Assembly: GCA_000388065.2 (NCBI GenBank)
Contig: KB932207.1
Origin: Fonticula alba ATCC 38817
Lineage: Eukaryota > Protista > Nucleariida
DNA length: 64,000 nt
Strand: one strand, 5' to 3'
Both the position numbers and the translations under genes were made by a program. The notes beneath the pieces were generated by a model. It did not search any database and had not been told where the DNA came from. It worked only from the letters and a program-made list of their open reading frames with translations. How positions within the stretch are numbered: the first letter of the stretch is position 1; each line of letters opens with the position of its first letter. Of the stretch, positions 35,721 through 53,841 are shown piece by piece.

Positions 35721-37613
35721 ATGCGTGGTGGAGGTCGATCTGGTGGCGATGATGGCATGATCAGCGGGGCGCGCTTCGAGTCGAACTCGTATTCCGGGTC
35801 CTCGTCCCATCACTTTGACTCCGGTGGCACCAACTACTCCGGGAGCAGTAGCAGTGCCAGTTGCTCCTGCTGCGCGGTTTCCCCGGTCAGCGCTGCGTAC
35901 TGTTGCCTGGTGCGAAGATCGTCGTACGTATGACCCGGTGTCGAGGGTGTCTTTTGGCTGTGTTTGTGTGCATCTGTGTGCATCTGTGTGCATCTGTGTG
36001 CATCTGTGTGCATCCGTGTGCATCTGTGTGCATATGTGTACATCTGTCTTCCTGTGTACATATGTGTACATATGTGTTCCTGCATATCTCCTGTGCGCGG
36101 GCGGGTGGGTTTGGGAACACCCCGCACCTCCCTTTTCCTTTCCCCCGGCACCGCTGGCCCGCCACTGACCGAGGGCTCTTTCACCTGTCGGGGCGTTCCT
36201 GCCCGGGTGCGTGCCATGCACCCGGGCGCATGGCCCTCGCTCGGCTCAACGCACGCTTCTGCCACGCACACACACACACACACATACACCGGCGGACACA
36301 CATGCACGCACGCCGACAGGACCCTGCCCCGATCGGCGCTGGTGCCGCTGGTGGTCTCCATCTCCGGCTGCTGGTGGGGCTTGCTGCTGTCGTTTGTGGC
36401 GGTTCTGGGGTGTGTCATTGCCCTGCCGCTGTACACGTCGCGATCGTGGTCCCTCCCGCCGGCGGGGACATTCAAAATCGAAGTGAACCCCCGGTTTTAC
36501 AACGGGGTGACGCACCGGTCCGGCCCGGATGTCGAGATGTACTTCACGCCGGCGGCCGAGGGGTCGCCCACGCGCGTCAGCACACTGACCGGGGACATGG
36601 CCACCGAACTGCAGAGCCCCCTGGCCCTGTACTACCGCGCGGTGGAGGTCCACGTGCCGGCCGGCGGGCAGGTTGTTTCGATTTTGTCCAGCGAGGCGTC
36701 CTGCCCGCTGGACTACCTCATCATCCAGGGGACCTACAACTTCGAGGACTGGCAGGAGGGCGAGTGGATCTCCTACGAGTATGAGGGCACCTTGGAGCCG
36801 GGGAAGCCGCTGGTGCACACGCTGACGGCCACCCGGTCGGGGTACTACTTCTTCGTGGTGTTCAATGACTCGATGGGGTCCTGCCCCCGGGCGCCGGTCT
36901 TCATGCAGCTGTCGGCGGATTTGCCGGCGTACCGGCTGTCTCCGAGCCGGCAGATGGCCCTCGGCCAGCTGGTCCCGGTGTCGGACGAGCAGCCGGGCCT
37001 GGCGTCGATCATCGTCCGGAGCATGGCCGAGGTGAGGTATTACAATGCGCAGGTGGCCTACTCCCGGCGTCCGGGGGCTTTGGATTTGTTGCTCGGCCTG
37101 GCCATCGGCCTGCCGCTGGGGCTGACGGCTGTCATTGTGGTGGTCGGCCTGGTGGTGCACTGGGTGAGGGCCCACCGGAGCCGGGTCTCGCGACGCCGGC
37201 AGAACCCGGGCGACCACGAGCTGGGTGCCGTGCTGGGGATCGGCTACCTGGAGGGCCTGTACCCGGTGTCCACGCAGCAGGGCTCCCCCTCGCCGGTGGG
37301 TCCGGCGGCGCAGGCGAAGATGCATCCGGCCGGCGGGGCGCCCGGCGCGCCGGACGAGCAGGACATGGAGTCGCCTGACTCGCCGATCGGGGTCTTTTCG
37401 TGGGAATCCCACGGCGAGGCCCATGGCGCGGCGCCCGACCGCCCGGCCGGGGAGGATCCGCCCGGCCCGGGGCATGGCGTGCCCCCGGCGGGGACGATGC
37501 CGGCCGGCTGGGCAGCCGGCGATCTGTCCCTGGGGCAGCAAATGGACGACCCGCCGCCGCCGTACTCGCCAGAGCCGCCGCCTTCCTCGGGTGGCGACTG
37601 GTCCAAGTACTGA
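35721..37613 (+). CDS. 2-TM membrane protein, paralog A (APD-like luminal domain, C-terminal PPxY and WSKY); exons 35721-35923 and 36320-37613
   Basis: A phase-2 GTACGT..CAG intron keeps frame. TM1 is CWWGLLLSFVAVLGCVIALPLY and TM2 is LLLGLAIGLPLGLTAVIVVVGLVV. The protein ends DDPPPPYSPEPPPSSGGDWSKY*. Strong similarity to paralogs B and C. Confidence 0.85.
35965..36044. repeat. 10-bp tandem repeat (TGTGTGCATC)n in the intron of paralog A
   Basis: About 8 units read directly. Confidence 0.85.
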
Positions 37614-38485
37614 AGCGCGAGTGGCACCTGTACTGACGGTGGATTGTGTTTCTTGCGCGTGTGTGTGCGCGCGCGCGCCTTCCAAGTGGGGATGGCGCGT
37701 GTGCGCGGTGCCGTTGGTGTGGCTGGTCATGCTGGGGCAGTGGTGTACGGCGGGGAGATGTGGGATGCCCTCGCTCTCCCTCTGCCTTGCTTGCACCCCC
37801 CCCCCCTCTCCCTCTGGTGGGGCTGTGAGGCGACGGGGGGCCCCGTGTCCATGTGGAGGTCGGGGGTGTGGGTGTTGCTGTTTGACCGACGGCCGGCGAC
37901 AGTATCCGACTCAAGGGGGGGGGGGAGCCCTGCTGGTGGCCGGGGAGGGACGCGTCGCCGGTCGCCGCACCAGGGTTCCTCTAGGGCGAGGAGGGCTCTC
38001 CTCCGGGGGAGGGGCGAGAAGAAGTGTGTGCGTGTGTGTGTTTGATCCGCCGCGACTGCGCACGGACCCGAGAGCCGCATGGGGCCGGGGCTCAATTGGA
38101 AGGGCCCTGCGGCGACTCGTGGGGCGACTTGTGGCAACGGGGAGTCACTCAGGGTGCCAAGTGCTGGGGCAGGGAGGAGGAAAGAAGCCGCGGGATTTTC
38201 CGGCACGAGGTGCTGACGCGCGCTTGTGTGGGCGTGCAGCCCCGTGTGCGCGCGAGTGTCTGTATGTGTCTATGTGTGTCCATGCGTGTTCATGTGTGCG
38301 TATGTGTTCATATGTGTCTCTCTCTCTCTCTCTCTCTGTTTCTGTGTGGAGTTCACCGGGTGTGCCTGCTTCAGGTCGCCTCGCACTCTGCCCCCTCCCC
38401 CGGATGAAGGGTGAGCGCCTGTGCCCTGCAAGCGAGGCAGGGAAAAGGCACATATTCCCGTGGTGGAGCCGGGCTCCTCAAGAAA

Positions 38486-38557
38486 GGGGGCTTAGCTCAG
38501 TGGTAGAGCACTCGACTCCAGATCGAGCGGTCAGTGGTTCGATCCCTCTAGTCCCCA
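38486..38557 (+). tRNA. tRNA-Trp(CCA)
   Basis: Acceptor GGGGGCT/AGTCCCC, anticodon arm CTCGA-CTCCAGA-TCGAG, T-loop TTCGATC (one T-T mismatch in the T-stem). Confidence 0.9.
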
Positions 38558-38669
38558 TTTCCTTTTGCCAGCCATGTTTTTTTGTGTCGCCAGCCCGGGT
38601 GCGGGAGACCTCCGGCCCGGGGCCATAATGCGGCTCGACAAAAGCATCCCCGCGTCGGGCGTTTGTCAG

Positions 38670-38751
38670 ATCACCGTGTCCGAGTGGTTAAGGAGTCCGA
38701 TTAGAAATCGGATGGGCTCTGCCCGCGTAGGTTCAAATCCTGCCGGTGATG
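38670..38751 (+). tRNA. tRNA-Ser(AGA)
   Basis: Acceptor ATCACCG/CGGTGAT, anticodon arm TCCGA-TTAGAAA-TCGGA, long variable arm GGGCTCTGCCC, G discriminator. Confidence 0.94.
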
Positions 38752-39693
38752 CATCTTCACTTTTGCGCCGGCAAGGGTGTCTGCTTTTGGAGGCGGCCGC
38801 GTGGCACTTCCGCGGGTGTGAGAAGAGAGCACCGAGAGAGAGAGAGAGAGAGAGAGAGTGAGAGAAGCAGACCATTTGCGTGTCCGCACGGGTGTGTCTC
38901 CGGAACCGGGGAAGCCCGGCGGCGGGGCAGAGCGTGCATGTTCCTTTTCCCTGCGCCGTGGGGCCGTCTGCGGGCCCGGCACTGCTCCCGGGAGGCGGCG
39001 CCGCCCTTCTCGGCCGGTGGAGCGGGCGCGGGGGTCGAGTGCGCGGCGTTTGCGCCTGATCGGGGCGCAGCTCGGTGTGGTTGCCGGGTGGACGCCCTTC
39101 GAGCCGGGGGGGAAGTGTGGCTGGGCCGACGGAGCGCGTGTCGGGGCCGGCCGACTGGCTTGTGCGGCGTCTTCCCTTTCTGGGGGGGGGGGGAACCACG
39201 CGCCCGGGGCTGCGCAAGTGCGCGGGCGGGCCGCCTGGAGGGTGGTGTCCGCCGCTTGGACGGCCCTCGGGAGGTGGCTGCGCCGCGCGCCGCCGGCGGT
39301 GCGTTCTTGTCCTGGAGGCCGGCGCCGGCGGTGCGGCGAGTGGCCCCCCGGTGGACTGAAAGAGTTGCCCCGGGCCGCGGCCGGGCGGAGCTGCATATAT
39401 GCCGGGACTCGGTTCCCCGGTCGCGGGCTGGCCGGCACCTGGGCCCCTTTTTGTGGCGGGATCTCCGGCAAGTGGCGTGTGCCGCGCGGCCGCCATCGGC
39501 CGGGTCAGCTCCTGCTGTTTGAGCTGGCGGGCTGTTCCCCCCCCCCCCCCCGGGATCTGGCCTGTGGCGCCCTCTCAGGCCCCCGCGCCCCCCCCACTTC
39601 GGGGCTGGGCGATGTGCCAGGCGCGGCCCAGTGCGTGTGGGATGCCCAGTGCGGGGGAATGTCAGCTGCCGACTCATGGCCCTTTCGTGGGCA

Positions 39694-39766
39694 TCCCATA
39701 TAGTCTAGGTGGTTAGGATACGTGGCTCTCACCCACGAGACCCGGGTTCGAGTCCCGGTATGGGAA
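39694..39766 (+). tRNA. tRNA-Glu(CTC)
   Basis: Acceptor TCCCATA/TATGGGA, anticodon arm CGTGG-CTCTCAC-CCACG, T-loop TTCGAGT. Confidence 0.94.
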
Positions 39767-40328
39767 CTCCCTTTTTGTCTTGTGCGTGCGAGGGGTGGGA
39801 GCGTGTACTCGTCGTCGATGCACCCGAGGAGTGGAGGGCGGGCCCTTGTGGTCGCCGGTGTCGGACTGCCGGCCCTCGGGCCGAGCGCCGCCGGAGCCGG
39901 CTCCAGCTGGAGAAAGCCCCCCCTCCCCCTTTGCCGGCGGCCCCTCCTCCTCTGGGGGGTGGGGGGGGATCGTGCCCCGGCGCGCCCTTTCAGCCGCGAT
40001 TTTCCTGCAGGGGATGGTTGGCGCCTTGCTGCCTGTGGGCCCCTGGGCTCTCTCGGGCTGTGGTTGTGGCTGGGGGGTCCTGTGTGACGGGAGTCCGAAT
40101 GGGGCGCGGAGGGTGGCCCCTCGGCCCTTGTCCGCGGACGATGGGGCTCTGTGCATGTGCATTGTGCGGCGCGTCGTGTGCTCGGGGGCAACTCCGTTGC
40201 CCGGGGGGGGGCCGCACGCCGGCGCGTGTAGCCGCGTGTCATCAGTGGGATCTGCCAGCCCAGGCACCCAGTGTTCGAGCATTCCTCACTGACAAATACC
40301 CCTTGGACCTGGCGGTCTTCAGGCTTCG

Positions 40329-40399
40329 GCGTCGATGGTTTAGTGGTAGAATTGCCGCCTGCCACGCGGTAGACCCGGGTTCGATTCCCGGTCGACGCA
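40329..40399 (+). tRNA. tRNA-Gly(GCC), copy 2
   Basis: Identical to 32757-32827. Confidence 0.95.
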
Positions 40400-40503
40400 A
40401 GCCTTCTCTTTTGGCTCCCTCCGCCGGTTTGCATTTCGACCGGGCTGCTGCCCTTTTTTCTCGCTCCCAGTAGGCGGCGGGGCGCGCGGGCGTGTGTGTG
40501 TGC

Positions 40504-40554
<51 letters not shown>

Positions 40555-41097
40555 GCTACCAGAATGAGCCGGGCCCGATGTCCGGCGCGGGGCAACGCCG
40601 GGGACTGCCGGCGTGCGAATGGCGCCCGGGGATCCCCGGGCGGCAGGCGGTCGCGCGCGCCGGGCACATGGCTCCAGTGGGCCGGCCGATCGTCGAGAAC
40701 GGATGAGCCCTCTTGTACGGTGCCTGCCTGGGGGTCTTCCCTTGGTGCCTTGCTTGGGCGAGGGGGGGCTGTCCGGTCTCGGCCAAAAGCGTGGCAAGAA
40801 CAGCAGAAGGAGCAGAAACAGCGGGACGCTGCCCGACCTTATGTTCCCTGGATGTGGGCCTGGGCTGCCCCCCCCCCCCCCCCCCCCGGCGCGGGAGGTC
40901 TCCTTCTCGCGGGAAGCGGGAGGGCCGCCGCTCACCGGGAGGGGTCTCTCAGGAGGAGGATGCCTCGGGTGTGGCTCCTTCTGGGGGCGAGACGCGCGCC
41001 GGGCACACTGGCCTGCTCGGGGGTGGGAGCCCGAAGGCCGGGTGCCCCGGTGCCGAACGTCTAGATGGACGGCAGACGGCGGAGGGCGTAGTGACCG

Positions 41098-41171
41098 GGC
41101 CCCATAGCTCAGTTGGTTAGAGCGTCGTGCTAATAACGCGAAGGTCGTCAGTTCGATCCTGGCTGGGGCCA
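41098..41171 (+). tRNA. tRNA-Ile(AAT), copy 1
   Basis: Acceptor GGCCCCA/TGGGGCC, anticodon arm TCGTG-CTAATAA-CGCGA, T-loop TTCGATC. Confidence 0.95.
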
Positions 41172-41910
41172 TTTCTCTTTTGTCGCTGGGGCGGGTTTTC
41201 CCAGGTGCCCCCTGGGCGAAGAGCCGAGAGCACCGCGCCGAGGAGAGGCCGGGGGGGGGATGCACGCCGCCCGCCGGTGCCGTCGGAGGAGGGGCCGCAG
41301 AGCGCGCCCGAAGGGCGGCGGGAAAAGGGGGACGCGGGGGGCCCTGGGGCGGAGAGGCCCTCTCCCCCCCCTCGGGCTGGAGCACACGACCAGAGCGCGA
41401 GGCCGAGGCGGGACGCGTCCAGGCAGCTGCCCACGAAGCAGCGGCCCCCAGCGAGGCGTATCGGGCAGGCGCCGCGGCCGGCCCCGGCTGAGTCTCAAGC
41501 GGGGGGGGGGTGCTTTCCGCCGCGGCCGGCGGTTGCCCAGTGGGGTCAGGCGGCGTCCTGGGTCCCTCCCGCCGGGGGGGGCGGCGCAGATCGGCAAGAT
41601 CCAACTCGGGGGCATTGGCTGCCCCTTTGGATGGCCCGGCTCCGAGGGCGGTCCGAGGGCGAGGAGCGGCGCCCGGACGGCCGCGGTGGCGGACACACAC
41701 CCACACAGAGGGCATAAAAGCCCCCTGGTCGGCGGGGGCGACCCCGGTCGGTGGCACGTCCGGCAACGACCTCCCCCCCACGCCCCTCCCCCCTCCCCTC
41801 CTCCCCTCCACGCCTCCCCACGCCTCCCTCTCCACCTCCCCCTCCTCTTCACACCGCTCTCGCCCTCGCTCCGGCTCTCGGACCTCCCCGATCGTCTCCC
41901 ACTACGAAGC

Positions 41911-42193
41911 ATGCTGGGCGGAGATCGATCCGGCGGCGATGATGGCGGCGGCATGAGCAGCGGCGTGTACGGCGGCTCGGACTCCTGCTCCGACACGTCC
42001 GGCTACTATCACACGTCGGATGGGGCGTACGAGTCCTCCTCCAGCGACTGCCGGTGCACCTGCCTCGATGTGACCCTGCCGAATGCCTTCTACTGTATGG
42101 TGGTGTCCTGGAACAGGTGGGTCCTTGGTGTGGGGGTGGTTTTTTTTCCCTGTGGTGTCCCCCCCCCCCGGGGTTCATCCTCCCTCCCTCCCT

Positions 42194-42224
<31 letters not shown>

Positions 42225-43557
42225 CCCCTGCCCCGCCTTGACCGCCCGCTGACCGACTCTCCTACTTCTTGGGCAATCCCTGTCGGGCGCTCGCGGCCCT
42301 TGGCGGGGGTTTTCCGCGGCGGGACACAGCTCCCTGCCCCGATCGCTGCTCAAGCTCAGGGTCCTCGGGATCGCGGCCTGCTGGTGGGGGCTCATCCTGT
42401 CCATTGTGGCGGCCCTGTCCTGTGTGCTCTTCCTGCCGCTGTACACGTCCAAATCGTGGTCCCTGTCGCCGGGGGGGACCTTCAAGATCGAGGTCAACCC
42501 CCGGTTCTTCGACGGGGTCACCCACCTGTCCGGGGCCGAGGCCGAGATGTACTTCACCCCGGCCGAGGAGGGCCCCCCGGGGCGCGTCAGCATGCTGACC
42601 ACCGACATGGTGTCCGAGCTGCACAGCCCGTCGGCGCAGTATTATCGCGCGTTCGAGCTCCACCTGCCGGCCGGGGGCCAGGTCGCGTCGGTTCTGTCCG
42701 GGAATGTGCCCTGTCCACTGACCTACCTCATCATCCAGGGGTGGTACAATTATGACCAGTGGCGGTACGGGGAATGGGCGCCGGTGGTGTTCCAGGCTAC
42801 GCTCTTCGCCGGGCATCCGATCACACACACCCTGCTGTCGTACGAGACGGATTCCTACTTTTTCGTGGTCTTCAACAGCTCGCATGGGGCCTGCCCCACG
42901 GTGCCGCTGTTCATGCAGCTGTCGCCGGAGGTGCCGGCATACCGCCTGTCGCCGAGCCGGCGAATGGCCCTGGGCCAGGAGACGGCCGTGCCGGCCGGCC
43001 ATGCTGGCATGGCGTCGGTCATCGTCCACACCAAGAGCGCGCTGCGGTATTATGACGTGCGGCTGGGGTACTCCCGGCGCCCGGGCGAGCTGGATGTCAT
43101 GCTTGGCTTGAGCATCGGCCTGCCAGCCGGGCTGGGGGCCCTGCTTGCGGTCATCTGCTGGACGGTGTTGCATGTGAAGGTGGCCCAGAGGCGGCGACTG
43201 GCCGGTGGGCCGGCCTGGCAGCAGGTGTCGCCGGATGACGGGGGCGCCGGTGCTGCCCCGACTCCGGGGTGCCCTCCGGCCGGCGGTGCGGCATACGGGC
43301 ATGCCGGCCGGTCGGCGGACTTGTCGCCGGCTCCGGCCGATGGGTGGCCCGATGTGGCGCATGATCCTCTGCTGGGAGGGCTGCCGGCGGGTTTGGCGAC
43401 ATCCCGGCCGGGGTCGCCTGGCATGCCGGCGTATGGCGCGACGGGGCAAAGCTGGGCCTGCGACGGGGCGCCGCTGGACTTTGCCGCGGCCGAGCCCCCG
43501 CCGCCGTACTCGGCCGAGCAGTCATCCTCCTCAAATGTGGGATGGTCCAAATACTGA
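41911..43557 (+). CDS. 2-TM membrane protein, paralog B; exons 41911-42116 and 42330-43557
   Basis: A phase-2 intron sits at the same position as in A and C. Motifs: CWWGLILSIVAALSCVLFLPLYTSKSWSLSPGGTFKIEVNPRFFDGVT, CPLTYLIIQG, YFFVVFNS, YSRRPGELDVMLGLSIGLP. The protein ends EPPPPYSAEQSSSSNVGWSKY*. Confidence 0.85.
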
Positions 43558-43798
43558 CGTTCGTGGGCCCGGTGGCTGGATTCCTTTGAAATGCACCTGG
43601 CCGAGAGGTTGTCTGTGGCCTGGGAGCTGGCGGGGGGGGGGGGGGGGGTTCCCCCCTTTTACAGATGGCAGTACATTCCGGGTGCCCGCGCGCGCGCGAT
43701 CGGGACCACATCTGTTTGTGAGTTGTCCCTCGCGGCCTCAAAGCGGAAACATGGGCCTGCGAGGAGGAGGGACGCAAGGGGATGGTTCGCATAGGTGT

Positions 43799-43852
<54 letters not shown>

Positions 43853-43989
43853 CTCATCGTCGTGGCGTTGGTCGGTGCAGGGGCCGCAACCAAGTGGGGT
43901 GTGCATGAGTCTGCTTTTGTGTATGTATGTATGTGTGTGTGTATGCATGTTAATGTGTGCATGTTAATGTGTGTTTGTGTTTATGTGTG

Positions 43990-44240
43990 TGTATACCTGT
44001 ATACCCGTGTAATTGTGTTCCTGTATACTTGTGTACTTATGTACCTGTGTATTTGTGCACCCGTATCCCTGTGTACCTGTGTATTTGTGCACCCGTATCC
44101 CTGCGTACCTGTGTATTTGTGCACCCGTATCCCTGTGCACCTGTGCACCTGTGCACCTGTGCACCTGTGCACCTATGCACCTGTGCACCTGTGTACTTGT
44201 GTACCTGTGCACCCGTGTCCCTGTGCACTTGTGTACCTGT
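43990..44240. repeat. Hierarchical minisatellite: three 32-bp units followed by (CCTGTGCA)n 8-mers, downstream of paralog B
   Basis: GTACCTGTGTATTTGTGCACCCGTATCCCTGT occurs three times from 44041; about 7 8-mers follow. Confidence 0.8.
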
Positions 44241-44792
44241 GTGTGTGGCCAGGTGGGCTTCGCATGCTGGCCGATCGGCCGCTTCTCCGAGCCGGCCGCG
44301 CGCCGGGCCCTCGAAGGACCTGTCTCGGGTGAAGGAGCACACCATGGCCGTGTGGCCGGGTGACGCAGAGGGCCGGGGGGCGTGGGCCTCTGGCAAGAGG
44401 TGGGCCGGACTCCCGCCTCCCGTGTTGCAGGCCCCCCCCTCCCTCCACGGCCCCGGGCCTTGCTGCGATTCCTCTCCCGATGGGGTTCGTGGCGTCGTGA
44501 GGGTCTCTCCCGTGGCGGGACGGCCCTTTGCGCCGGCCACGGCCTTTTGCCGGGACCTTTCCCCGTCGTTTGCTCTCCGGGGCTGGCGGGGCAATGTCAG
44601 CGGGCATGCGCGTGCCGGGCTCGCCCTCCGGAGCGGGGGGCTGGTGGGGGGATTGCTGCGACCGGCGCCGGGGCCGGTGCTGGGGCGAAGCTCGAGCGGC
44701 CCGGCTCCCTGGCCGCCGTGGGTGTCCCTCGGTGCAGGGCCGTCCGGAGCAGGGCGGCAGCAAAAGAGCCCCCGGGGCGTACCCGAGTCCAT

Positions 44793-44866
44793 GGCCCCAT
44801 AGCTCAGTTGGTTAGAGCGTCGTGCTAATAACGCGAAGGTCGTCAGTTCGATCCTGGCTGGGGCCA
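44793..44866 (+). tRNA. tRNA-Ile(AAT), copy 2
   Basis: Identical to 41098-41171. Confidence 0.95.
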
Positions 44867-45057
44867 GACTTGCTTTTTGCCGGGGGCTCCTCTTTCCCCG
44901 CCTCGCACGCGCCCCGGCCAGACGACCAACTGGCGAGGAGCAAGCAGCGCCCCACCTGGGCCTCCCCCCCCCCCCCTGCCCCATGGGTCTGCGAAGGGCA
45001 GTAGTTGCAGGGTGTATTTGTTGAGGCTAGGCACATCCCGGGGTGGGTGTGTGCGTG

Positions 45058-46073
45058 TCAGGGCGCGGCCTGGCACGCGGCCGCCAGGCTGGCCGCCTGG
45101 GGGCGCTGCGCCGGGTCCGAATGCCACATCGAGGGCAGCATGTCCAGGGCCCAGGCGATCAGTGGGTCGTCGAGGTCCAGAACCGGCTGGGGGCCATGGG
45201 AATCCGGCCGCTGCTGGTGGTGCAAGACCGCGGCCGCCACGGCGGCGTGGGCGAGGCCTGGACGGGGAGGGGGGGGGGGGGGGGAGAGGGAGGCATGGTG
45301 TTAGGGGGAGGCAGCTCGCTGGAGGTGGGCGCCCGGAGGGGGGACGAGGGTCGGCGCACCGTTCCATGGGTGCTGGTGCGTCAGCAGGTGCCACGCCACC
45401 GAGGCCAAGGAGTAGACATCGGCCGCCAGGTGGCTGACGGCCTGCAGGTTGACCACCGTCTGGCCGAGGTTGCTAAGAATCTGCAGGGGGCAGCGCATGG
45501 GCAAGGGTCAGGGGCGCAGGGCGAGGGGCGCAGGGCGAGGGGCGGGGCACGCACCTCCGGCGCGGCGAAGAACACACTGCATGCGCCGGGCAGGACCGAG
45601 TCCAGGAGGGCCGACCCGCGGGACACGGCGACCGACACGCCGAAATCCGTGAACAGGGGCCGCATGCGCCCGGTCTCGGTGGACACCCCGACCAGGATGT
45701 TCTGGGACTTGATGTCGCGATGGGCCACGCCCTCGGCATGGATGAAAGCCAGCCCGGCGACTGGGGGCCGCGGATTGGGTGGTCAGCCGGGCAGGGGGGA
45801 GGGGGGGGGGGGGAGCGGGGGGGACAGGGCGAGGGTGGCAAGCGGGCGCATTTTGGGGGGCCATCCTGTCCCCCGGGGTCGAGGAGGCCGGGGAGCGAGC
45901 GTGCGACGTACACATGCCGCGTAGCAGTGCGCGAGCGTCCTCCAAGGCCACCGGCTCGCCGCGGTCCAGCAAGCTATTCAGGTCGGTCGGCTCGCGGCCG
46001 AGAATCAGCGCCGACGGGGCACTGGTATATCCAATCAGCCGGACGATGTTGGGCGAGGCCTGCAGGGCCCTGG

Positions 46074-46114
<41 letters not shown>

Positions 46115-49100
46115 CATGGATGTGCGTGGATGTGCGTGTTCGTGCATGGATGTGCATGTGCATGTGCATGTGCATGTGCATGTGCATGTGCATGTGCATG
46201 TGCATGTGCGTGGTGGGTTGGGCCGGGCGGGGTGAGCAGGGGGGCGGGGGTTGGCAGGCGCGCCAAGCGGACAAGGCGGACAACGCACCAGATGATGGAA
46301 AGCTCGTTGCGGAACATGATCTCGGCATGCTCAGCCGGCAGGGCGCCCGGCGTGCCGGCGGCTAGGAGCCCGGCGGTCGGCGGGTCAGTGACGGCAGGGC
46401 AGGTCAGGAGGGGGCCCGGGAGCGGATCCGGCCAGTGTCGAGTCGCGTACGGTGGAGCATCTTCAAGACAAGGGGCGCGCCCCGAGCCCTGTCCGCGAGG
46501 GCCGGCGTGACGGCCGTGGCGTCGAGGATGCGCGCCTGTGCCCCGGCTCCGACCTGCTGGTCGTCAGCCAGGCGGACGTCCTCATTGAGGGAAAAGAGCA
46601 AGAACCCCGGCACCGCGAGGTCTGCCAGGGCGCATGCGCCGCACAAAGCAAAGACGTTAGTGACCGGCCACCGCAGGGAGGGCCCCATGGGGCGTGGGCC
46701 ATGCTGGGTGGCTGTTTCTGGGCGTCGGCACGCACCGACTAGGGTGTTCATGACGGTCCGGTCGTCATCCTGGGCCGGTTGGGAGGTTAGCCGGGCGGAA
46801 GGGTCAGTTAGGGCCACGGGTGGTGCTTTGGGCATGTTCGTCTCTCTCTCTCTCCCCCCCCAACCGGGAAAGCGACGCACATCATTGATGTCGGTCTTGG
46901 CGAGGCCGGCAGCTTGGCGCTGGCGCCACATGCTGAAGAGCACCAGCGCGGCGGCCAGCAGCAGCAGCAGCAGCACCGTCACGCCGACGCCGACGCCGAT
47001 GGCCACGGACCGGGCTGTCGGGGCATCGTGTCCCGGAGCGAGAGCCGACGGGGGGGCGAGAGCGGGGGGGGGGGCGGATGGTGGAGGTGAGTAACTACGA
47101 GGGCCGGGGGCGCCCCGGGGCCGAAGGCCAGGGCGCACGAAGGCTGCCCGCGTGTCAGGAGGGGCGCGAGCGGGGGAGGCACGTACCCGAACGCGAGCAT
47201 GTCCCCTCGAACTGGCACCAGGTGGCCTGGCAGTGGCTGCCGGCCGGGCCGGTGCATGTGTGGCAGCCCTCGGCACAGGGGAGACAGACCCGGGCGTCGG
47301 GCGCCGGAGAGGTGACATCTTCGAAGAAGCCGCCCGGACAGACGGCCACGCAGGCCGGCTGCGGGCCGGTGACCAGGGCCAGGCCGGCCTGGCAGACGGT
47401 GCAGGCGGCCCGGTTGCAGGTCATGCAGCCGCTGACGCAGGGTCGGCACTTGGCCTGGGCCGTGTCCAGCCAGTAGCCGGCATCCGGGCACCGGGCCACA
47501 CAGCGCCCGGTCAGCAGGACCCGGTCGGGGAGCCTGCAGGCCAGGCAGCTGCCGGGCCCGGGGCCGGAGCAGCGAGCGCAGCTCGAGTCGCAGGCCAGGC
47601 AAAGGCCCTCCTCGGGGTAGGTCCCATCGGGGCAGGCTTCCAGGCAGGCGCCCTGGGCAAGGTACCGGCCGGGGGGGCATGCGTCGCAGGCGTGCGCATC
47701 GTCGGCGGTCAGGCAGCCGGCGCAGTGGGCATGGCAGGCCCGGCAGAGGGTGGCGTCATTGGCCGGGGGCGCCTCGCCCGGGGGGCAGGTGTCGACGCAC
47801 TGGCCGGCATCCGGGCGAAGCCGGGCCCCGGGGGCCGAGCAGGCGGTGCAATGGCCGGCGGCATGGCGGCAGCCGGCACACTCCGGCTGGCAGGGGGCGC
47901 AGGCGCCGGCGTCGTCGAACTGCCGGGCCGGGCAGGTCCCGGCACAGACGCCGGTCTGGAGGAGCACCAGCCCCGGGTCGCAGCGCAGGCACCGGGGCCC
48001 GGGCTGGCCGGGGGCGGCCTCGCACTCGGCGCAGCCGGCCTCGCAGGCGACACACGCCGGCGGCTCGTCACTGGTGGGGGCCATGCCGGCCGGGCAGGCG
48101 GCCGCGCAGCCGCCCTGCGGCAGGAGCAGCCACTCGGGCGTCCGGCAGGTGAGACACACGTGCGGGTGGTCGCATGTGGCGCAATCGGCGGCACACGGCC
48201 GGCAGGCGGCCTGGGGGATGTCGGCAAAGTGCCCGGCCGGGCAGGTGGCCATGCAGGCGAAGCCCCCCTCCGGGGCCGGGAGCCGGTAGCTGCCGCGCGG
48301 GCAGGACACGCACTGGTCCGGGCCCGGCCCGGTGCATTGGGAGCAGCTGGCATGGCACCGGCTGCAGCCGGTGCTCGAGGACTGGAACCACCCGACGGCG
48401 GAGCAGGCATCGCGGCACTCGCCGGCCTGGAGGAACCGGCCCGGCGGGCAGGACTGGCATTGGTTGCTGGCCGGGCCGAAGCAGGAATCCCCACAGGAGC
48501 TGGAGCACCGGGTGCAATAGCCGGACCCGGGGGGCAGGCCGTGGCCCGGCGGGCAGGCCGCCACACAGCGGCCATCCAGCGACACCAGCGGGTCGCGGCA
48601 TTCCAGGCAGAAGCTGCCCTCCTCGTCGGGGACCTTGCGACAGAGGACACAGTCATCCTCGCATTCGGCGCACTGGGACGGGTCATTGAGGCAGTCCGGC
48701 ACGCATTGGCCCACGGCCAGGGGCGGCTCCACCGGGGGGATGGGCTGGCGAATGACCAGCGGCGGGTCGCACGCGGTGCAGTCACTGGAGCCGGGCCCGG
48801 CGCACTCCTGGCAAAGGGGATGGCAGGCGAGGCACTGGGCCGGGGCGGTGTCGGCATCGAAGGTGCCACTTGGGCACTGGTCCACGCAGGCCCCATCGAG
48901 GAGGTGGTGCCCGGTCGAGCAGGCGGTGCAATTGGCCACCGACGTGCAGGTGGTGCAGTTGGCCGAGCAGGGGGAGCAGGCGCCGCCGGCGTCGTGGAAG
49001 TTCGGCGGGCAGCTGGACAGGCAGCCGCCTTCATGGAGCAGGTGGCCGGCGGTGCAGGCGGAGCAATTGGTGGAGGAGGTGCAGGAGGTGCAATTGGCCG

Positions 49101-50060
49101 AGCAGTTGGAGCNNNNNNNNNNAGGTGGCCGGCGGTGCAGGCGGAGCAATTGGCGGAGGAGGTGCAGGAGGTGCAATTGGCCGAGCAGTTGGAGCAGGTG
49201 CCATTGGAGGGAAAGGTCCCGCCGGGGCAGGGGGCGACGCAGGCCCCGGCGTGGAGGAAGTGCCCGGCGGTGCAGGCCGTGCAGAGGGTGGCCGAGGTGC
49301 AGGAGGCGCAGTTGGCCGAGCACGCGAGGCAGGAGCCGCCGACGGCGACGAAGCCGGCCGGGCAGGCGGACAGACACTGGCCGCTGTGATGGAAATGGCC
49401 CTGGGAGCAGCTGCTACAGAGGGAGGGGGAGCTGCAGTGGGTGCACTCCTCTGGGCACGAGTAGCAGGCGTTGTAATCCAGGTAGAAGCCCTCCTCGCAG
49501 GAGGAGCAGCCGGATTGGGTGCACATTTGGCAGTTGATCGGGCAGAAGGCCTCGCAACTGCGATCGACCATCAGCGAGTAGGGCTGGAGGCATTCAAGGC
49601 AATCCCGCCGGCTGGGGTCGTATATCTGGCAGCCGGGGGCACAGAGGATGTCCGCTTGGTGGCTGGCATCCGGAAGGGCCTGGGCGATGGGGCAGAGCTT
49701 CCGGGCGGCGGTGCAGAAGACCCGGTCGCCGAAGGCAAAGGCCGCGCCCTCCGGGCAGGCCAGGCAGCCATACTCGTCGCAGGGGCCGAGGCAGGATTCC
49801 GGGCAGGCCGGCGACTGGGTGTGGGCCTGGGCCTGGGCATCCCACCGGAAGGGCAGGCCGTAGCGCAGGGCGGCGACCATGCGCTGGTCGCCGCCGGCGG
49901 CCTCGAGTGCCGCCGCCGCCGCCGAGTCGAGCACGGGCAGCGCCTGGCGGCGGGTCGGCAGCGAGTGGACCACTCGCAGCAGCAACGCGAGGCTGAGCAG
50001 GCCGGCGAGCAGCACTCCGGCGGGCCGGAGCGGCAGTGGCAGCCGGGCCGTGCGTGTCAT
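45058..50060 (-). CDS. Type I receptor kinase 2: signal peptide, about 17 furin-like Cys repeats, TM, TKL-type RD kinase; the apparent frame change coincides with the gap at 49113-49122
   Basis: Signal GVLLAGLLSLALLLRVVHS, CxxC-rich ectodomain, TM VAIGVGVGVTVLLLLLLAAALVLF. Kinase exons encode VGAGAQARIL, LVLKML, FRNELSIIW, HRDIKSQN, FTDFG, FFAAPE, ADVYSLASVAW and MWHSDPAQRP. Intron positions match kinase 1. Confidence 0.88.
46151..46209. repeat. (TGTGCA)n hexamer microsatellite in an intron of kinase 2
   Basis: About 10 units read directly. Confidence 0.85.
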
Positions 50061-51181
50061 CGCGGGCACGAGGAGGGGGGGGGAGTGGAATGTGCAAGGG
50101 CGGAGAGTGAGGGGAGGCGGGGGGGAGGGGAGGAAGGGTGCTGGTGTGCCGGCAGTCGGGGGTAGGGGACTGTTTCCGTGGGTCGGTCTTATGCCGGTGT
50201 CTGTCCGGGGGGAGGGCGGGTCCAGAGGGCACGGCGGCAATCTACAATGCCCGCGCCCGCGGCCCAGGTGGGGGCGTGGGGCGGGCGAGATCGGGTTGGG
50301 GGGCGGGCGCTTGTCGACGGCGGGTCACACGGGCGAGCACGACTGGCGTTTGGTCGACAAGAGGGGGGGGCATCGGGCCGGCCAGTCGGGGTGCGCCGGG
50401 TGGCCCGGGTGTGTTGGCTGAATGGCTTGGGCACCGCCAGTTCCGGGAGGCAGGGCGGTCGGACGGGTTGGACGGACCATCGCGCACCCTGTCGTCGGGC
50501 GGTTGGGGGGGGGAAAGCAGGGCGAAAACACACGCACGCACGCACGCGCGCGCGCCCGGCACCCGGGACAAAGGCCAGCCTGGTTTCGGCCTATCGGCAG
50601 GCATGTGGGCGGCCCGGGCGTGGGCCCTGCATGTTGGCTGGCGTCGGGGGAGGCCCGGCCCGCTATGATGCTGGGTGTGCCCGACCGCGCCCGGGGGGCG
50701 GGGGGCGGGGGCGAGGGGGGATATCACATAATAAACAAAAACACCTGGGGAATGTGAGGGGGCGGGAACAGGCGCCGGCAACGGGAACGCGGCATGTAGC
50801 AGGTCGGGCCCCCTTTTCCATGCCGGAGAGGCCCCCTTCTGCGGAGGCCACCGGCCGAGGGCCGGGTCACGCGCACCTACGTGATCAGGGATCCAGCGCG
50901 GACCTGCCATCGCCCGGGATGGCCTCGCACACCTCGGGAGGCATCCCACCGCTCCGGGGGCGAGGGGCCGCATCGAGGCCGGTCGGCTGGCATGCGGCGT
51001 CCGGCCCGGGGCCCGCCTCGCCCTGGTGGATGGCCCCCCCGACGCGCGTGGCCCGGCCAGTCGGGGGGGGGGGGGGGGGGGCGGACCTCCTTGCGGGTCT
51101 GCCGGCGGCGCGTTGCCGGCGGAGGCTGCGAGCTTTTTTCCACCGATAAATTCCGCATCTTGGGGGGCGTCCCCTACCGGT

Positions 51182-51255
51182 GGCCCCATAGCTCAGTTGG
51201 TTAGAGCGTCGTGCTAATAACGCGAAGGTCGTCAGTTCGATCCTGGCTGGGGCCA
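51182..51255 (+). tRNA. tRNA-Ile(AAT), copy 3
   Basis: Identical to copies 1 and 2; followed by a T-run. Confidence 0.95.
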
Positions 51256-51971
51256 GATTCTTTTTGGGCCGGCGCGCGTTGGTCGCGCACTTGCCGACGG
51301 ATCAGTGGCTCTTTGGAATGTCGGGGACGGTGGCATCCGGTGGCACGTGCGCACATCGGCCCCAGTTGCCAGGCGTGTGCGAGTCATCCTCGGGCCGGGG
51401 GGGGGGGGGGGGGGGGGAGAGCGCGAGCGCGCGCCGCCCTGACACCAGCCGCAATCCCCGGCAGCGGGCCCGGTCCTTGATCCCTCTCGCGGGCCCTGTG
51501 TGCGACGTGGTGGGAACGCGGGGCCCGCCAACTCCGGGGCCAGGCGCCGGGGCAAGGCCGGCGGTGCGAAAGCACGCCGGGCCTAGGCCGCGCATGGGAC
51601 TTGCCCCTTTGGATGGGAGCCGGCCCGGACACATGCGCCGGGGCGGGGGGCCGGCCGGCGGCCGGCGCCTTTCCCTCGGCAATTTCGCTCCCCGGCCTTC
51701 CGGCCCCCGGAGGCGCTCCACAGGAGCCGATTCGCGTGGCGCGATCGCCGGCGGAACAAAAGGCACCAGGCCGGGGCGCGGTTTGGCCGTGGTCGCCCGA
51801 GCAAAAAGGCTCCACGATCACTGCCGTTTGTTTTTTTTTTTGCGTTTCGGATCCGTCCTTTCCCTCCGCCGCTCCCCCTGCCTTCGTCCCCTCCGCCTGT
51901 CGTCTTTGGCTGTCGCCCCCTCCCCCACACGCACACCTACTCCCCCCCCTCCCCAGCCTACCCTTTGAACC

Positions 51972-53739
51972 ATGCGGGGTGGACGCCGCTCCGGTGGCGG
52001 CGGCATGAGAAGCAGCTCGCGCTCTCGAAGCCGATCATACTCCCGGTCCTCCTCGCGACGGCGCTATCGGTCGAGCAGCAGCACCTACTACTCGTCCGGA
52101 TCCAGCGCCGACTGCGATTGCAGCTGCTGCGGCGGGCTTTTCTGCCGGGCCATCTACTGTTGCGGGCCCCCGAAGAATTCGTGCGCGGCCGTCGGGCAGC
52201 CATCTGCCTCCTGCTTCTTTGACTGCCTTCCCCAGGTCCCGCCCCCCCTCCCCGCCGGTGTGTCTGCATTGCCGACTGACCATGGCCATTCCCCCCCCCC
52301 CCCCCGCCCCGCGCCTGCCCATGCCGCGCCGCGTGCGGATGCCCCTTTGGCGCAGGCCGCTGCCGCGGATTGTCGTCGCCCATCGGATGATCTGCTCGTG
52401 GTTTTGCTGGTGGGGCTTCATCCTGTCCTTCGTGGCCATGCTGGCCTGCGTGTCCTTCGTGCCGCTGTACACATCGCGCTCGTGGTCCCTCCCGCCGGCC
52501 GGGACCTTCACCATCAAGGTGAATCCCCACTTCTTCGACGGGGTGACCCCCCTGTCGGGGTCGGCGGTGCAGGCGTACTTCCTGCCGGCGGCGGATGGCC
52601 CGCCGGAGCGGGTCAGCCAGCTGACCGGCGACATGGTCACCGAGGTGGAACCCCCCGGCGGGGGGTTCTATCGAGCGATGGAGGTCTACCTGCCGGCCGG
52701 GGCGCGGGTGACTTCGATCCTGGCCGGGCAGGTGTCCTGCCCGTTGGATTATCTCATCATCCGGGGGAGCACCAACTTCGACGATTGGGCCTATGGCGAT
52801 TGGGTGCCACTGGAGTGGGAGGGCAAGCTGTGGCCCGGGCAGGAGCCCTTGACCGAGTGGCTGCCGGTCAGCCGGTCGGACCACTACTTCTTCGTGGTGT
52901 ACAACTCGCTGTCCGGGCCCTGCGGCGCGGGGCCGCTTCACTTGCAGCTGTCGACGGAGGCCCCGGCGCACCGGCTGCCTCCCGCTCGGCGGGTGGCCCT
53001 GGGCCAGAGGGCGGCCGTGTCGAATGCCGACCCGGGCATGGGGACGATCATCTTCCACACCTCCAGCTCGCTGGAGTACCATGACGCGCGGGTGAGCTAC
53101 TCCCGGCGGCCGGGGGCCCTGGACCTGGTGCTGGGGCTGAGCATCGGCCTGCCGTATGGGCTGGCGGTGGTGGTGGCCCTGGTCAGCTGGCTGGTGATGC
53201 GCGTGAGCATCGCCCGGGATCCGGACCTGCTGAAGAGCACGAACCGGCGGCTGCCGGTGTTCGACGAGATCCGGGAGATCAGCGGCCCGATGCGGCCGAG
53301 CAACAGCGCGGCCGAGGAGCTGCCCACGTCGGAGGAGCTGTTTGCCATGTCCGCCGACTTGGAGTCCCAGGCTCGGGGCGCCGCCTCGAAGCCGGTGGCC
53401 GGCTCGAGGCCCGCCAGGGCGGTGCGCTTCGCCGACGAGGACCCCGGGCCGTATGCCTCGAAGGAGATGTCCCTCATCTCACCGGGTGCTTCGTCGGTGA
53501 GCTTCCAGGCCGGCGACGATGGCGCGGACGATGGGGAGGGCGGCATCATGCTCGTGCCTCTGACCGAGAGCCTGCCCCCCGGTCTGCCGTCTTCCGGTGG
53601 GCCGGGCGGCGGGGGGCCGGCCGGGGCCGAAGTGTCCCCGGACCGGTCGGTGCCCGACATGCCGATGTCGTCGCCGCCGCCGCCGTACTCGGCCGAGTCG
53701 TCGCCCTCCTCGGCGGATGACGGCTGGTCCAAGTACTAA
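51972..53739 (+). CDS. 2-TM membrane protein, paralog C; exons 51972-52180 and 52356-53739
   Basis: Phase-2 GTGCGC..CAG intron; RS-rich, Cys-rich first exon. Motifs: CWWGFILSFVAMLACVSFVPLYTSRSWSLPPAGTF, CPLDYLIIRG, YSRRPGALDLVLGLSIGLP. The protein ends SPPPPYSAESSPSSADDGWSKY*. Confidence 0.85.
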
Positions 53740-53777
53740 ACGCCGTGTGTTTTTGCGATTGGGAATAGACTTTCCTC

Positions 53778-53841
<64 letters not shown>

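What the first reader, a model, noticed from the sequence alone, without database searches (positions are those of the whole stretch)
35721..53739. Three-member 2-TM family resembling APD-type E3 ligases but with a PPxY-WSKY tail instead of a RING
Seen: paralogs A, B and C share TM1, an approximately 200-aa luminal domain (PLYTSxSWSLxPxGTFxIxVNPxFxxGVT, LPAGxxV, CPLxYLIIxG, YFFVVxN, YSRRPG) and TM2. Their tails are otherwise unalignable, yet all end PPPPYSxE-x(6-7)-WSKY*. From memory, the luminal pattern matches the N-terminal and middle domains of plant APD1-4 RING ligases (former DUF4792/DUF4793); no RING is present here. Known: PPxY binds WW domains of Nedd4/Rsp5 HECT ligases, as in Ndfip, Bsd2, Ear1 and Ssh4. 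Inference: a RING-to-PY switch producing membrane adaptors that recruit a HECT ligase in trans; the invariant terminal WSKY is an unexplained second motif.
Basis: partly seen in the sequence, partly recalled or inferred. Interest (0 to 1): 0.85.

Follow-up and report, generated by a model that had tools for sequence, protein, structure and literature searches.

The report
RING-less APD-like membrane proteins with PY tails
Three neighbouring genes of the slime mould Fonticula alba encode two-pass membrane proteins whose luminal domain is a distant relative of the plant APD ubiquitin ligases, but where the ligase's RING finger would sit they carry a conserved PPxY...WSKY tail that most likely recruits a separate Rsp5/Nedd4-type ligase.

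Summary
The window is Fonticula alba. Genes A (35721-37613), B (41911-43557) and C (51972-53739) each have two exons. They encode an N-terminal Gly/Ser/Cys-rich stretch, TM1, a 217-aa luminal domain, TM2 and a 126-177-aa tail. The middle of the tail is no more alike between paralogs than shuffled sequence. The last 20-21 residues (PPPPYSxE-x8-9-WSKY-stop) are conserved. Two more paralogs elsewhere in the genome end the same way, and a sixth, divergent member has no such tail.

A profile search reaches Pfam-positive APD1-4_N/M proteins. hhalign gives 98.3% (97.2% on the luminal part alone). An AlphaFold model (pLDDT 87) returns Arabidopsis APD1-4 as the four best of 550,129 Swiss-Prot models. 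Pfam itself does not hit the Fonticula proteins.

Spliced RNA contigs run through the stop codons of B and C, and no RING-like pattern lies on that strand.

RING-less APD-domain proteins of sponges also end in PPxY, so the architecture recurs.

WW/HECT binding, adaptor function and the direction of a "RING-to-PY switch" remain inference.

The assembly gap lies in an unrelated minus-strand gene.

The scan had already noted this stretch on the same DNA.

The parts
35721..35923 (+). Paralog A (H696_04663), exon 1: cytosolic N-terminus MRGGGRSGG..., Ser/Gly-rich, with a Cys cluster next to the membrane
   Evidence: Matches residues 1-68 of annotated protein P0001. No RNA contig was seen for A.
36320..37613 (+). 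Paralog A, exon 2: TM1, luminal APD-like domain (36426-37076), TM2, disordered tail, PPPPYSPEPPPSSGGDWSKY-stop (37551-37613)
   Evidence: AlphaFold model of residues 66-372, pLDDT 86.9.
41911..42116 (+). Paralog B, exon 1 (MLGGDRSGG...)
   Evidence: RNA contigs cover 41852-42112/6 and splice to 42326/30; intron GT..AG; the spliced frame was checked.
42330..43557 (+). Paralog B, exon 2: TM1, luminal domain (42436-43086), TM2, tail, PPPPYSAEQSSSSNVGWSKY-stop (43495-43557)
   Evidence: RNA contig is continuous to at least 43564, beyond the stop; translation.
51972..52180 (+). Paralog C, exon 1 (MRGGRRSGGGG..., Arg/Ser-rich, Cys cluster)
   Evidence: 1779-nt RNA contig covers 51831-52180 joined to 52356-53768; frame checked.
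52356..53739 (+). Paralog C, exon 2: TM1, luminal domain (52462-53115), TM2, tail, PPPPYSAESSPSSADDGWSKY-stop (53674-53739)
47155..50240 (-). Unrelated neighbour: signal-peptide, Cys-rich furin-like / GF_recep_IV repeat protein gene that contains the assembly gap
   Evidence: Pfam PF15913 at 4.8e-13 and PF14843 at 1.5e-12; ORFs.
49113..49122 (.). Assembly gap inside a collapsed tandem repeat of the Cys-rich gene. The frame is not preserved across it. It is outside the PY family.
   Evidence: Flanks 49040-49112 and 49123-49195 are 72/73 identical; TRF array 49051-49207; different ORF frames on the two sides.

Best explanation
A, B and C are expressed, intact members of a Fonticula alba family of at least five hairpin (two-TM) endomembrane proteins. 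Their luminal or extracellular part is a divergent APD1-4-type double beta-sandwich whose second half is GOLD-like. Both termini face the cytosol (inferred).

Where plant APD ligases carry a RING after TM2, these proteins carry a fast-evolving disordered tail. It ends in a conserved cassette: PPxY, a Ser-rich linker of 11-18 residues, then WSKY-COOH.

The most likely mechanism is as follows. The PPxY binds the WW domains of the organism's single Rsp5/Nedd4-type HECT ligase, so ubiquitination is supplied in trans instead of by a built-in RING. The invariant penultimate Lys of WSKY is the only Lys in the last ~90 residues of every tail. It is a plausible ubiquitin acceptor, as in yeast Sna3 (C-terminal PPAY plus the single target K125). 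Ubiquitination would then drive endosomal/MVB sorting of the protein itself and possibly of clients held by the luminal domain.

Shown: the gene models, transcription and splicing of B and C, homology to the APD luminal domains, absence of a RING, and selective conservation of the cassette. Inferred: topology, WW binding, the Lys as acceptor, and adaptor versus cargo.
For: Gene structure and RNA.

APD homology:
- Profile search hits P0007 (E 6.9e-6) and P0008 (E 2.6e-4). These score above the Pfam cut-offs for PF16040/PF16041.
- hhalign gives 98.3% over 259 columns and 97.2% for the luminal part only.
- ESM Atlas feature score is 0.95 to RING-less APD clusters.
- Adding the APD relatives to the alignment raised the model from pLDDT 60.8 to 86.9.
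- Foldseek top four are APD1-4 at E ~1e-14 to 1e-13, and the next hit is at 3e-5.
- Atlas structure search gives TM 0.68 to plant APD-RING proteins and 0.67 to RING-less mollusc clusters.

No RING.

Conservation of the cassette against a randomised tail.

The same tail ends P0002 and P0004, which lie on other scaffolds.

Independent recurrence: the sponge-type RING-less APD proteins P0007, P0018, P0019 and P0025 (Corticium candelabrum XP_062507988.1) end in ..EPPGYEEAAAM..EPPSYNEATAL..EPPSYNVATAMY and ..DPPNYEQAQKM.

A partner exists: Fonticula has one RSP5-subfamily HECT gene (PMC5913265, Table 1).

Precedent for a PY motif plus a downstream single Lys in a two-TM protein: Sna3 (PMC2171029).

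Lysine pattern in the tails.
Against: - Nothing here tests WW binding or ubiquitination.
- There is only one PPxY per protein, whereas the classical adaptors Ndfip and Bsd2 have two or three.
- Pfam's own APD models do not hit the Fonticula proteins, so homology rests on intermediates and on predicted structure.
- The Lys is not conserved in three of the four sponge-type tails, so the acceptor idea may be specific to Fonticula, or wrong.
- W and Y of WSKY are as invariant as K, which a bare acceptor site does not explain.
- No RNA contig was seen for paralog A.
Confidence: 0.6

Rival explanations
1. The proteins are only substrates or cargo. The PY cassette is a self-degradation or MVB-sorting signal, as for Sna3, and they do not bring Rsp5 to other proteins. 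The luminal APD/GOLD-like domain would have its own function, for example as a cargo receptor, and the tail would merely set its turnover.
For: Each protein has a single PPxY with a nearby single Lys, exactly the Sna3 arrangement. The second luminal sandwich resembles p24 GOLD domains (5azw TM 0.79 by target). No client is known.
Against: The homologous plant proteins are themselves E3 ligases. Replacing the RING by a ligase-recruiting motif at the same position suggests that the ligase-targeting role is kept. Cargo and adaptor roles are not exclusive; Sna3 and Ndfip are both.
Confidence: 0.3
2. The terminal cassette is a trafficking or docking signal unrelated to HECT ligases. One option is that W-x-x-[FY]-COOH acts like the C-terminal WxxF of NECAP, which binds the AP-2 alpha-ear. 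Others are an Atg8-type W-x-x-hydrophobic motif, or a PTS1-like SK[LY] end. The polyproline stretch would then bind SH3, EVH1, profilin or non-ligase WW proteins.
For: WSKY is invariant in all five proteins and is always the free C-terminus. NECAP's high-affinity AP-2 motif is a C-terminal WxxF (PMC3794858). Acidic or Gly residues precede the W.
Against: PPxY is conserved as such: PPPY in four proteins and PPSY in P0002, the Tyr never lost. It also recurs in sponge homologs that lack WSKY, which points to the PY motif as the common functional element. Tyr in place of Phe or Leu is not the canonical form of any of these motifs. The WSKY reading can also coexist with Rsp5 binding.
Confidence: 0.15
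3. The resemblance to APD is fold convergence between generic GOLD-like or jelly-roll beta-sandwiches set between two helices, not common descent.
For: Pfam APD models give no hit at E <= 1. Sequence identity to APD relatives is 16-20%. Many beta-sandwich proteins appear at E ~1e-4 to 1e-5.
Against: The luminal-only profile-profile match is 97.2% at E 3.6e-11, with shared motifs (Y.VI.G..NF..W and YYFVF/YFFVV). A gap of about nine orders of magnitude in Foldseek E-value separates APD1-4 from the next hit. The match spans TM1, both sandwiches and TM2 in the same order. Adding the APD relatives to the alignment sharply improved the model.
Confidence: 0.05
4. A RING exon exists but is missed, through mis-annotation or alternative splicing, so these are ordinary APD-type ligases.
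For: Only contigs, not raw reads, were available. Paralog A had no RNA support in the runs laid.
Against: RNA contigs of B and C run unspliced through the stop codon. tRNA genes lie 0.8-1.2 kb downstream of each gene. No C3HC4/C3H2C3 pattern occurs in any + strand frame near the genes. The stop immediately follows a conserved terminal motif in five paralogs.
Confidence: 0.03

Closest known systems
Arabidopsis APD1-4 (ABERRANT POLLEN DEVELOPMENT) transmembrane RING E3 ligases; Pfam PF16040 APD1-4_N + PF16041 APD1-4_M + PF13920 RING
   Same: Same order of TM1, double beta-sandwich luminal domain and TM2, with homology supported by profile and predicted structure. The cytosolic effector region follows TM2. 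The plant proteins are linked to the endomembrane system (V-ATPase and Rab interactors) and have no known substrates (PMC13210498).
   Different: There is no RING. The tail is disordered and ends in PPxY...WSKY. Pfam's APD models do not score the Fonticula proteins. Any ligase activity would have to come in trans.
RING-less APD-domain proteins of animals, uncharacterised (e.g. Corticium candelabrum XP_062507988.1; ESM Atlas clusters named 'APD1-4 middle domain-containing protein', commonest in Mollusca)
   Same: Two TMs, an APD_N/M luminal domain, no RING, a Gly/Arg/His-rich N-terminus, and a C-terminal PPxY within 6-7 residues of the end in the four sponge-type sequences read. These are the nearest non-Fonticula relatives found in 1.84 billion representatives.
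   Different: They score directly with Pfam. Their tails are short (about 60-80 aa). They have no WSKY, and only one of the four has a penultimate Lys. Identity to the Fonticula proteins is only 16-20%.
Ndfip1/2 (animals) and Bsd2 (yeast): PY-motif membrane adaptors of Nedd4/Rsp5
   Same: Small polytopic membrane proteins whose cytosolic PPxY/LPxY motifs bind WW domains and bring or activate the HECT ligase at endomembranes (PMC5892558, PMC9282857; abstracts listed). This is the proposed way of working.
   Different: No sequence or fold relationship. Those proteins have three TMs, no large luminal domain, N-terminal PY motifs, and usually two or three of them.
Yeast Sna3
   Same: A two-TM protein with a C-terminal cytosolic PPAY that binds Rsp5, and a single ubiquitin-acceptor Lys (K125) downstream near the C-terminus. 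The PY motif is needed for endosomal sorting (PMC2171029).
   Different: Sna3 is 133 aa with essentially no luminal domain, and it is unrelated in sequence.
p24/TMED GOLD-domain cargo receptors
   Same: The second luminal beta-sandwich (core residues ~97-205) superposes on p24 GOLD domains (5azw_B TM 0.79 by target, rmsd 2.6; 7rrm_A TM 0.73).
   Different: This is a sub-domain similarity only, with E ~1e-4 against ~1e-14 for APD. p24 proteins are single-pass with a coiled coil.

Membership tests
APD1-4 family (Pfam PF16040/PF16041 scaffold) | Direct match to Pfam APD1-4_N (PF16040) above the gathering score | tested here: not met
   hmmscan of A, B, C, P0002 and P0004 at E <= 1 gave no APD hit.
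APD1-4 family (Pfam PF16040/PF16041 scaffold) | Profile-level homology to proteins that do carry PF16040 + PF16041 | tested here: met
   The family profile hits P0007 at E 6.9e-6, which scores 47.1 bits on PF16040 and 54.2 bits on PF16041. hhalign gives 98.3% (E 1.3e-14), and 97.2% (E 3.6e-11) for the luminal part alone. All six target sequences match PF16040.
APD1-4 family (Pfam PF16040/PF16041 scaffold) | Same predicted fold and topology as Arabidopsis APD1-4 (TM, two beta-sandwiches, TM) | tested here: met
   Model pLDDT 86.9. Foldseek top four of 550,129 entries are APD1, APD2, APD3 and APD4, E 2.7e-14 to 4.7e-13, TM 0.49-0.54 by query. Atlas TM is 0.68 over 282 residues. Both sides are predictions.
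APD1-4 E3 ligases (functional class) | C-terminal cytosolic RING (zf-C3HC4_3, PF13920) | tested here: not met
   No RING in Pfam and no RING pattern on the + strand. Transcripts are continuous through the stop in B and C.
PY-motif adaptors or substrates of Nedd4/Rsp5 (functional class: Ndfip, Bsd2, Sna3, Ear1/Ssh4) | PPxY/LPxY in a cytosol-facing segment | tested here: met
   PPPY or PPSY is conserved in all five paralogs, 15-22 residues from the C-terminus. The cytosolic side is inferred from the Arg-rich flanks of both TMs and from the position of the RING in APD.
PY-motif adaptors or substrates of Nedd4/Rsp5 (functional class: Ndfip, Bsd2, Sna3, Ear1/Ssh4) | A WW-HECT ligase present in the organism | tested here: met
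   From the literature only: Fonticula alba has one RSP5-subfamily HECT gene (PMC5913265, Table 1). I did not re-derive this from sequence.
PY-motif adaptors or substrates of Nedd4/Rsp5 (functional class: Ndfip, Bsd2, Sna3, Ear1/Ssh4) | Physical WW-PY binding, and Rsp5-dependent ubiquitination of the protein itself or of clients | not testable with these tools
   Needs binding and ubiquitination assays.
Ndfip/Bsd2 family (homology) | Three TMs and the Ndfip/Bsd2 sequence family | tested here: not met
   Two TMs only. No Pfam hit to any such family.

The most novel reading that the evidence does not exclude
The APD luminal scaffold is an old, modular membrane 'sensor' that different lineages have wired to ubiquitination in different ways. 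Plants use a built-in RING. Opisthokonts (Fonticula, sponges, probably molluscs) use a PPxY tail that borrows an Rsp5/Nedd4 HECT ligase in trans. Prokaryote-like or Asgard relatives carry a zinc ribbon. In Fonticula the tail would have become a self-contained PPxY-linker-WSKY(Lys)-COOH switch that is ubiquitinated on its penultimate Lys. If so, the clients of the PY forms would point to the still unknown substrates of the orphan plant APD ligases.
Probability: 0.3. Interest if true: 0.7.

Novelty: new variant of a known kind. Interest (0 to 1): 0.55.

Why it matters
Plant APD1-4 ligases have a clear pollen-mitosis phenotype but no known substrate or luminal ligand (PMC13210498).

The same luminal scaffold exists outside plants without the RING. 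In Fonticula and in the sponge sequences read, both opisthokont lineages, it carries a PPxY tail instead. This is a natural experiment: the scaffold, not the RING, is the conserved part, and the ligase can be supplied in cis or in trans.

Three things follow:
- It defines a previously unnamed set of candidate Rsp5/Nedd4 partners. The Fonticula proteins are annotated 'hypothetical' with no domain.
- It offers a tractable route to the function of the scaffold: yeast or Dictyostelium-style expression, and PY/WW pull-downs.
- It supplies a sharply defined terminal motif (WSKY-COOH with an invariant Lys) whose role can be tested with three point mutants.

It is a hypothesis-generating finding about domain architecture, not a new mechanism.

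Tried and rejected
- Direct Pfam scan of A, B, C, P0002 and P0004 found no APD hit. The only hit was a chance Psg1 match at E 0.15.
- Word-indexed homolog searches reached only Fonticula paralogs or the small sponge-type group. The combined-alignment search added just P0020.
- A metagenome locus scan with the APD-like luminal profile matched 90 patterns, none confirmed.
- The first AlphaFold run, with five Fonticula sequences, was poor (pLDDT 60.8). It was used only as a preliminary fold search, which already put APD1-4 on top.
- Raw RNA-seq runs under the 'organism B' label gave only 1-2 partial reads on gene C, so they were useless. The older contig runs X1-X4 were informative.
- No RNA contig was found over the 3' end of paralog A, so A rests on the annotation and on homology.
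- P0006, a 646-aa tandem-repeat protein that hit the profile at 1.7e-9 in eight stretches on a YMFFVV-like word, was rejected as a repeat artefact.
- The PDB fold search gave only generic jelly-roll and GOLD matches (birnavirus VP2, p24 GOLD). No solved APD-like structure exists in that library.
- A hidden downstream RING was considered and rejected.
- Relevance of the assembly gap to the family was considered and rejected.

Full report
**What the window is.** The best protein matches to the finding are named Fonticula alba hypothetical proteins. Paralog A is letter for letter H696_04663 (P0001, 498 aa). The window is therefore from Fonticula alba, a cellular slime mould on the fungal side of the opisthokonts. 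Its DNA here is 60-75% G+C.

**The gap, tested first.** The ten N at 49113-49122 lie between paralogs B and C. They fall inside a minus-strand gene (47155..50240) for a signal-peptide, Cys-rich protein with furin-like and growth-factor-receptor-IV repeats (Pfam PF15913 4.8e-13, PF14843 1.5e-12). The 73 bases on each side of the gap are 72/73 identical, and TRF reports a repeat array at 49051-49207. The gap is therefore a collapsed tandem repeat. The Cys-rich reading frame upstream of the gap (ORF 47709..50240) is not the Cys-rich frame downstream of it (ORF 47155..49377), so the ten N do not give the true length. None of this touches the family.

**The observation.** Three + strand genes share the described architecture.
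- Each has two exons: A 35721-35923 + 36320-37613; B 41911-42116 + 42330-43557; C 51972-52180 + 52356-53739.
- For B and C the GT..AG introns are absent from RNA-derived contigs of four runs. Those contigs run on without a joint through the stop codons, to at least 43564 for B and to 53768 for C.
- For A, no contig was seen over the 3' end. The model equals the public annotation.
- The proteins are 498, 477 and 530 aa.
- Exon 1 encodes about 68 residues beginning M(R/L)GGxRSGG. It is rich in Ser/Gly/Arg and ends in a Cys cluster just before TM1.
- Exon 2 encodes TM1, a 217-aa domain with the quoted motifs, TM2, and a tail of 126-177 residues.

**The tail.** The middle of the tail is 24.4% identical between paralogs, against 22.6% for shuffled tails. 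The last 20-26 residues are 60.6% identical and the luminal domain 52%. BLASTN between the loci finds only the ~800-bp core and the last 65-70 bp. WSKY-stop occurs three times in all six frames of the window, each time at the end of a paralog. The spacer after PPPPYSxE is 8-9 residues, not 6-7. And the family is larger than three: H696_01005 (...APPSYSATVLPSSTDGWSKY) and H696_06077 (...LPPPYSAM-P7-VSSSAEGWSKY), on other scaffolds, end the same way. H696_00058 is a divergent sixth member without the tail.

**Is it APD-like? Sequence evidence.**
- Pfam does not say so directly: there are no APD hits at E <= 1.
- A profile of the five cores was searched with HMMER against 1.84 billion representatives. 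Outside Fonticula it found only four proteins.
- P0006 is a repeat artefact.
- P0007 (E 6.9e-6, matched over profile positions 14-279) scores 47.1 bits on PF16040 APD1-4_N and 54.2 bits on PF16041 APD1-4_M, both above the curated cut-offs.
- P0008 (E 2.6e-4) scores 32.8 bits on PF16040.
- Profile-profile comparison of the six Fonticula sequences with six such proteins gives 98.3% probability, E 1.3e-14, over 259 columns from TM1 to TM2.
- With both TMs removed it is still 97.2%, E 3.6e-11, over 161 columns. Shared motifs are Y.VI.G..NF(D/E).W and (Y/F)(Y/F)FV(V/F).
- All six comparison sequences match PF16040, and four match PF16041.

**Is it APD-like? Structural evidence.**
- The ESM Atlas feature search puts RING-less APD_N/M clusters first (0.95, 216 of 256 features) and plant APD-RING clusters behind them.
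- An AlphaFold model from the five Fonticula sequences alone was poor (pLDDT 60.8). Adding the APD-domain relatives raised it to pLDDT 86.9, pTM 0.70.
- With the improved model, Foldseek against 550,129 Swiss-Prot models returns Arabidopsis APD1, APD2, APD3 and APD4 as ranks 1-4. E-values are 2.7e-14 to 4.7e-13 and TM 0.49-0.54 by query, over essentially the whole model.
- Rank 5 is a p24/emp24 protein at 3e-5.
- The Atlas structure search gives TM 0.68 (282 residues, rmsd 4.3) to a plant APD-RING cluster and TM 0.67/0.60 to a RING-less cluster commonest in Mollusca.
- Among solved structures only sub-domain matches appear. They include p24 GOLD domains for the second sandwich (5azw_B, TM 0.79 by target).
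- I conclude that the luminal domain is a divergent homolog of the APD N and middle domains.

**No RING.** Pfam finds none. No C3HC4/C3H2C3 pattern occurs in any + strand frame; the only matches are the Cys-rich repeat genes on the other strand. tRNA genes lie within ~1 kb downstream of each paralog. The transcripts of B and C include the stop without a splice.

**The same idea elsewhere.** The nearest non-Fonticula relatives are themselves RING-less, two-TM APD-domain proteins of 343-388 aa. One cluster contains Corticium candelabrum (sponge) XP_062507988.1. P0007 and P0018 share an AIMP2-like neighbour gene. Their C-termini read ...DDEPPGYEEAAAM...NEPPSYNEATAL (with a second PPNY upstream)...NEPPSYNVATAMY and ...SDPPNYEQAQKM. 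So a PPxY sits within 6-7 residues of the end on the same scaffold in a second opisthokont lineage. Either the PY tail is old or it arose twice; both argue that it is functional. P0008, by contrast, has a C-terminal zinc ribbon. It lies in tightly packed, prokaryote-like contigs next to a CBS gene. The Atlas lists Asgard 'DZANK-type' proteins with the same fold. The cytosolic end of this scaffold is therefore modular: RING, zinc ribbon or PY. The direction of change is not determined by anything done here.

**How it most likely works.** Both TMs are flanked by Arg-rich segments on the N- and C-terminal sides, and in APD the RING follows TM2. From this I infer that both termini are cytosolic and that the beta-sandwich domain is luminal or extracellular. 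PPxY is the ligand of group I WW domains such as those of Rsp5 (PMC2171029). PY motifs on adaptors and substrates also relieve autoinhibition of Nedd4-family ligases (PMC5892558). Fonticula alba has one RSP5-subfamily HECT gene (PMC5913265, Table 1). The best-supported mechanism is therefore that the tail recruits that ligase.

**The WSKY motif.** I offer one concrete reading. Lys is rare in these proteins, and the penultimate Lys is the only Lys in the last ~90 residues of all five tails. In B it is the only tail Lys apart from the one next to TM2. Yeast Sna3 is also a two-TM protein with a C-terminal PPAY. It is polyubiquitinated by Rsp5 on a single downstream Lys, K125, near its C-terminus (PMC2171029). 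A PY-linker-Lys cassette would work as a self-contained ubiquitination switch. This does not explain the equally invariant Trp and Tyr. A C-terminal W-x-x-aromatic is also reminiscent of the WxxF-COOH of NECAP, which binds the AP-2 alpha-ear (PMC3794858). That reading is kept as a rival or an addition. Whether the proteins act as adaptors for other membrane proteins or are only cargo cannot be decided from sequence.

**Comparison and novelty.** The proteins are homologs of the APD scaffold but fail the defining RING feature of APD ligases, so they should not be called E3 ligases. They are not homologs of Ndfip, Bsd2 or Sna3, though they probably work like them. The full-text searches for APD1-4, PF16040/PF16041 and DUF4792/4793 listed plant papers for the protein family; the rest were unrelated uses of 'APD'. 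Within that library I found no description of RING-less, PY-tailed APD-like proteins. The Fonticula genes are annotated as hypothetical, with no domain. I rate this a new variant of a known kind.

**Scores.**
- Real genes, APD homology and no RING: about 0.9.
- PY tail engages Rsp5/Nedd4: about 0.6.
- True adaptor role: about 0.3.
- Overall interest: 0.55. It is a correct and well-defined architectural finding that makes the function of an orphan ligase scaffold more testable. All functional steps remain inferred.

Noticed in passing
window 47155-50240 (- strand), gap 49113-49122: A signal-peptide, Cys-rich furin-like / GF_recep_IV repeat protein gene is interrupted by the assembly gap. The gap sits between two 72/73-identical repeat units and the frame shifts across it, so the repeat copy number is unknown.
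   Followed up: partly
window 41098-41197, 44774-44879, 51164-51280: Three tRNA-Ile(AAT) copies share ~91% identity over ~100 nt including their flanks. Two of them lie ~800 nt upstream of paralogs B and C, which suggests the tRNA and the gene were duplicated together. Eleven tRNA genes lie in the window overall.
   Followed up: partly
L002:362-1516 (protein P0008) and its cluster: A 384-aa protein has an RGG/YGG-rich N-terminus, an APD1-4_N-like domain between two TMs, and a C-terminal zinc ribbon. It lies 6-14 bp from its neighbours (a CBS-domain gene upstream), which is a prokaryote-like context. Atlas structure hits include Asgard 'DZANK-type' proteins. The APD scaffold may predate eukaryotes.
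   Followed up: partly
window 35721-35760, 41911-41950, 51972-52010; P0025, P0023, P0008 N-termini: The N-terminal MRGGxRSGG of the Fonticula family resembles MPHGSGSRGGG (sponge) and MRRGGGSRGGG (P0008). This may be a conserved N-terminal motif, or only low-complexity Gly/Arg sequence.
   Followed up: no
window 43507-43509 (paralog B, Cys at the 17th residue from the C-terminus): The Logan-derived copy of B (P0003) reads ...SWAGDGAPL where the window reads ...SWACDGAPL. This is a single-residue strain or assembly difference in the variable tail.
   Followed up: no
window 51700-54300, runs X12 and X17: Large 2026 RNA-seq runs filed under the same species label ('organism B') gave only 1-2 partial reads on gene C, while small 2012 runs ('organism A') hold full spliced transcripts. 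Either the label is broader than the strain or the gene is not expressed in those samples.
   Followed up: no
window 37614-38480, 43560-44400, 53769-53851: Long (CA)n/(GT)n and poly-C/poly-P-coding simple repeats lie directly downstream of each paralog's stop. RNA contigs end there, so the 3' UTR ends are not defined.
   Followed up: no
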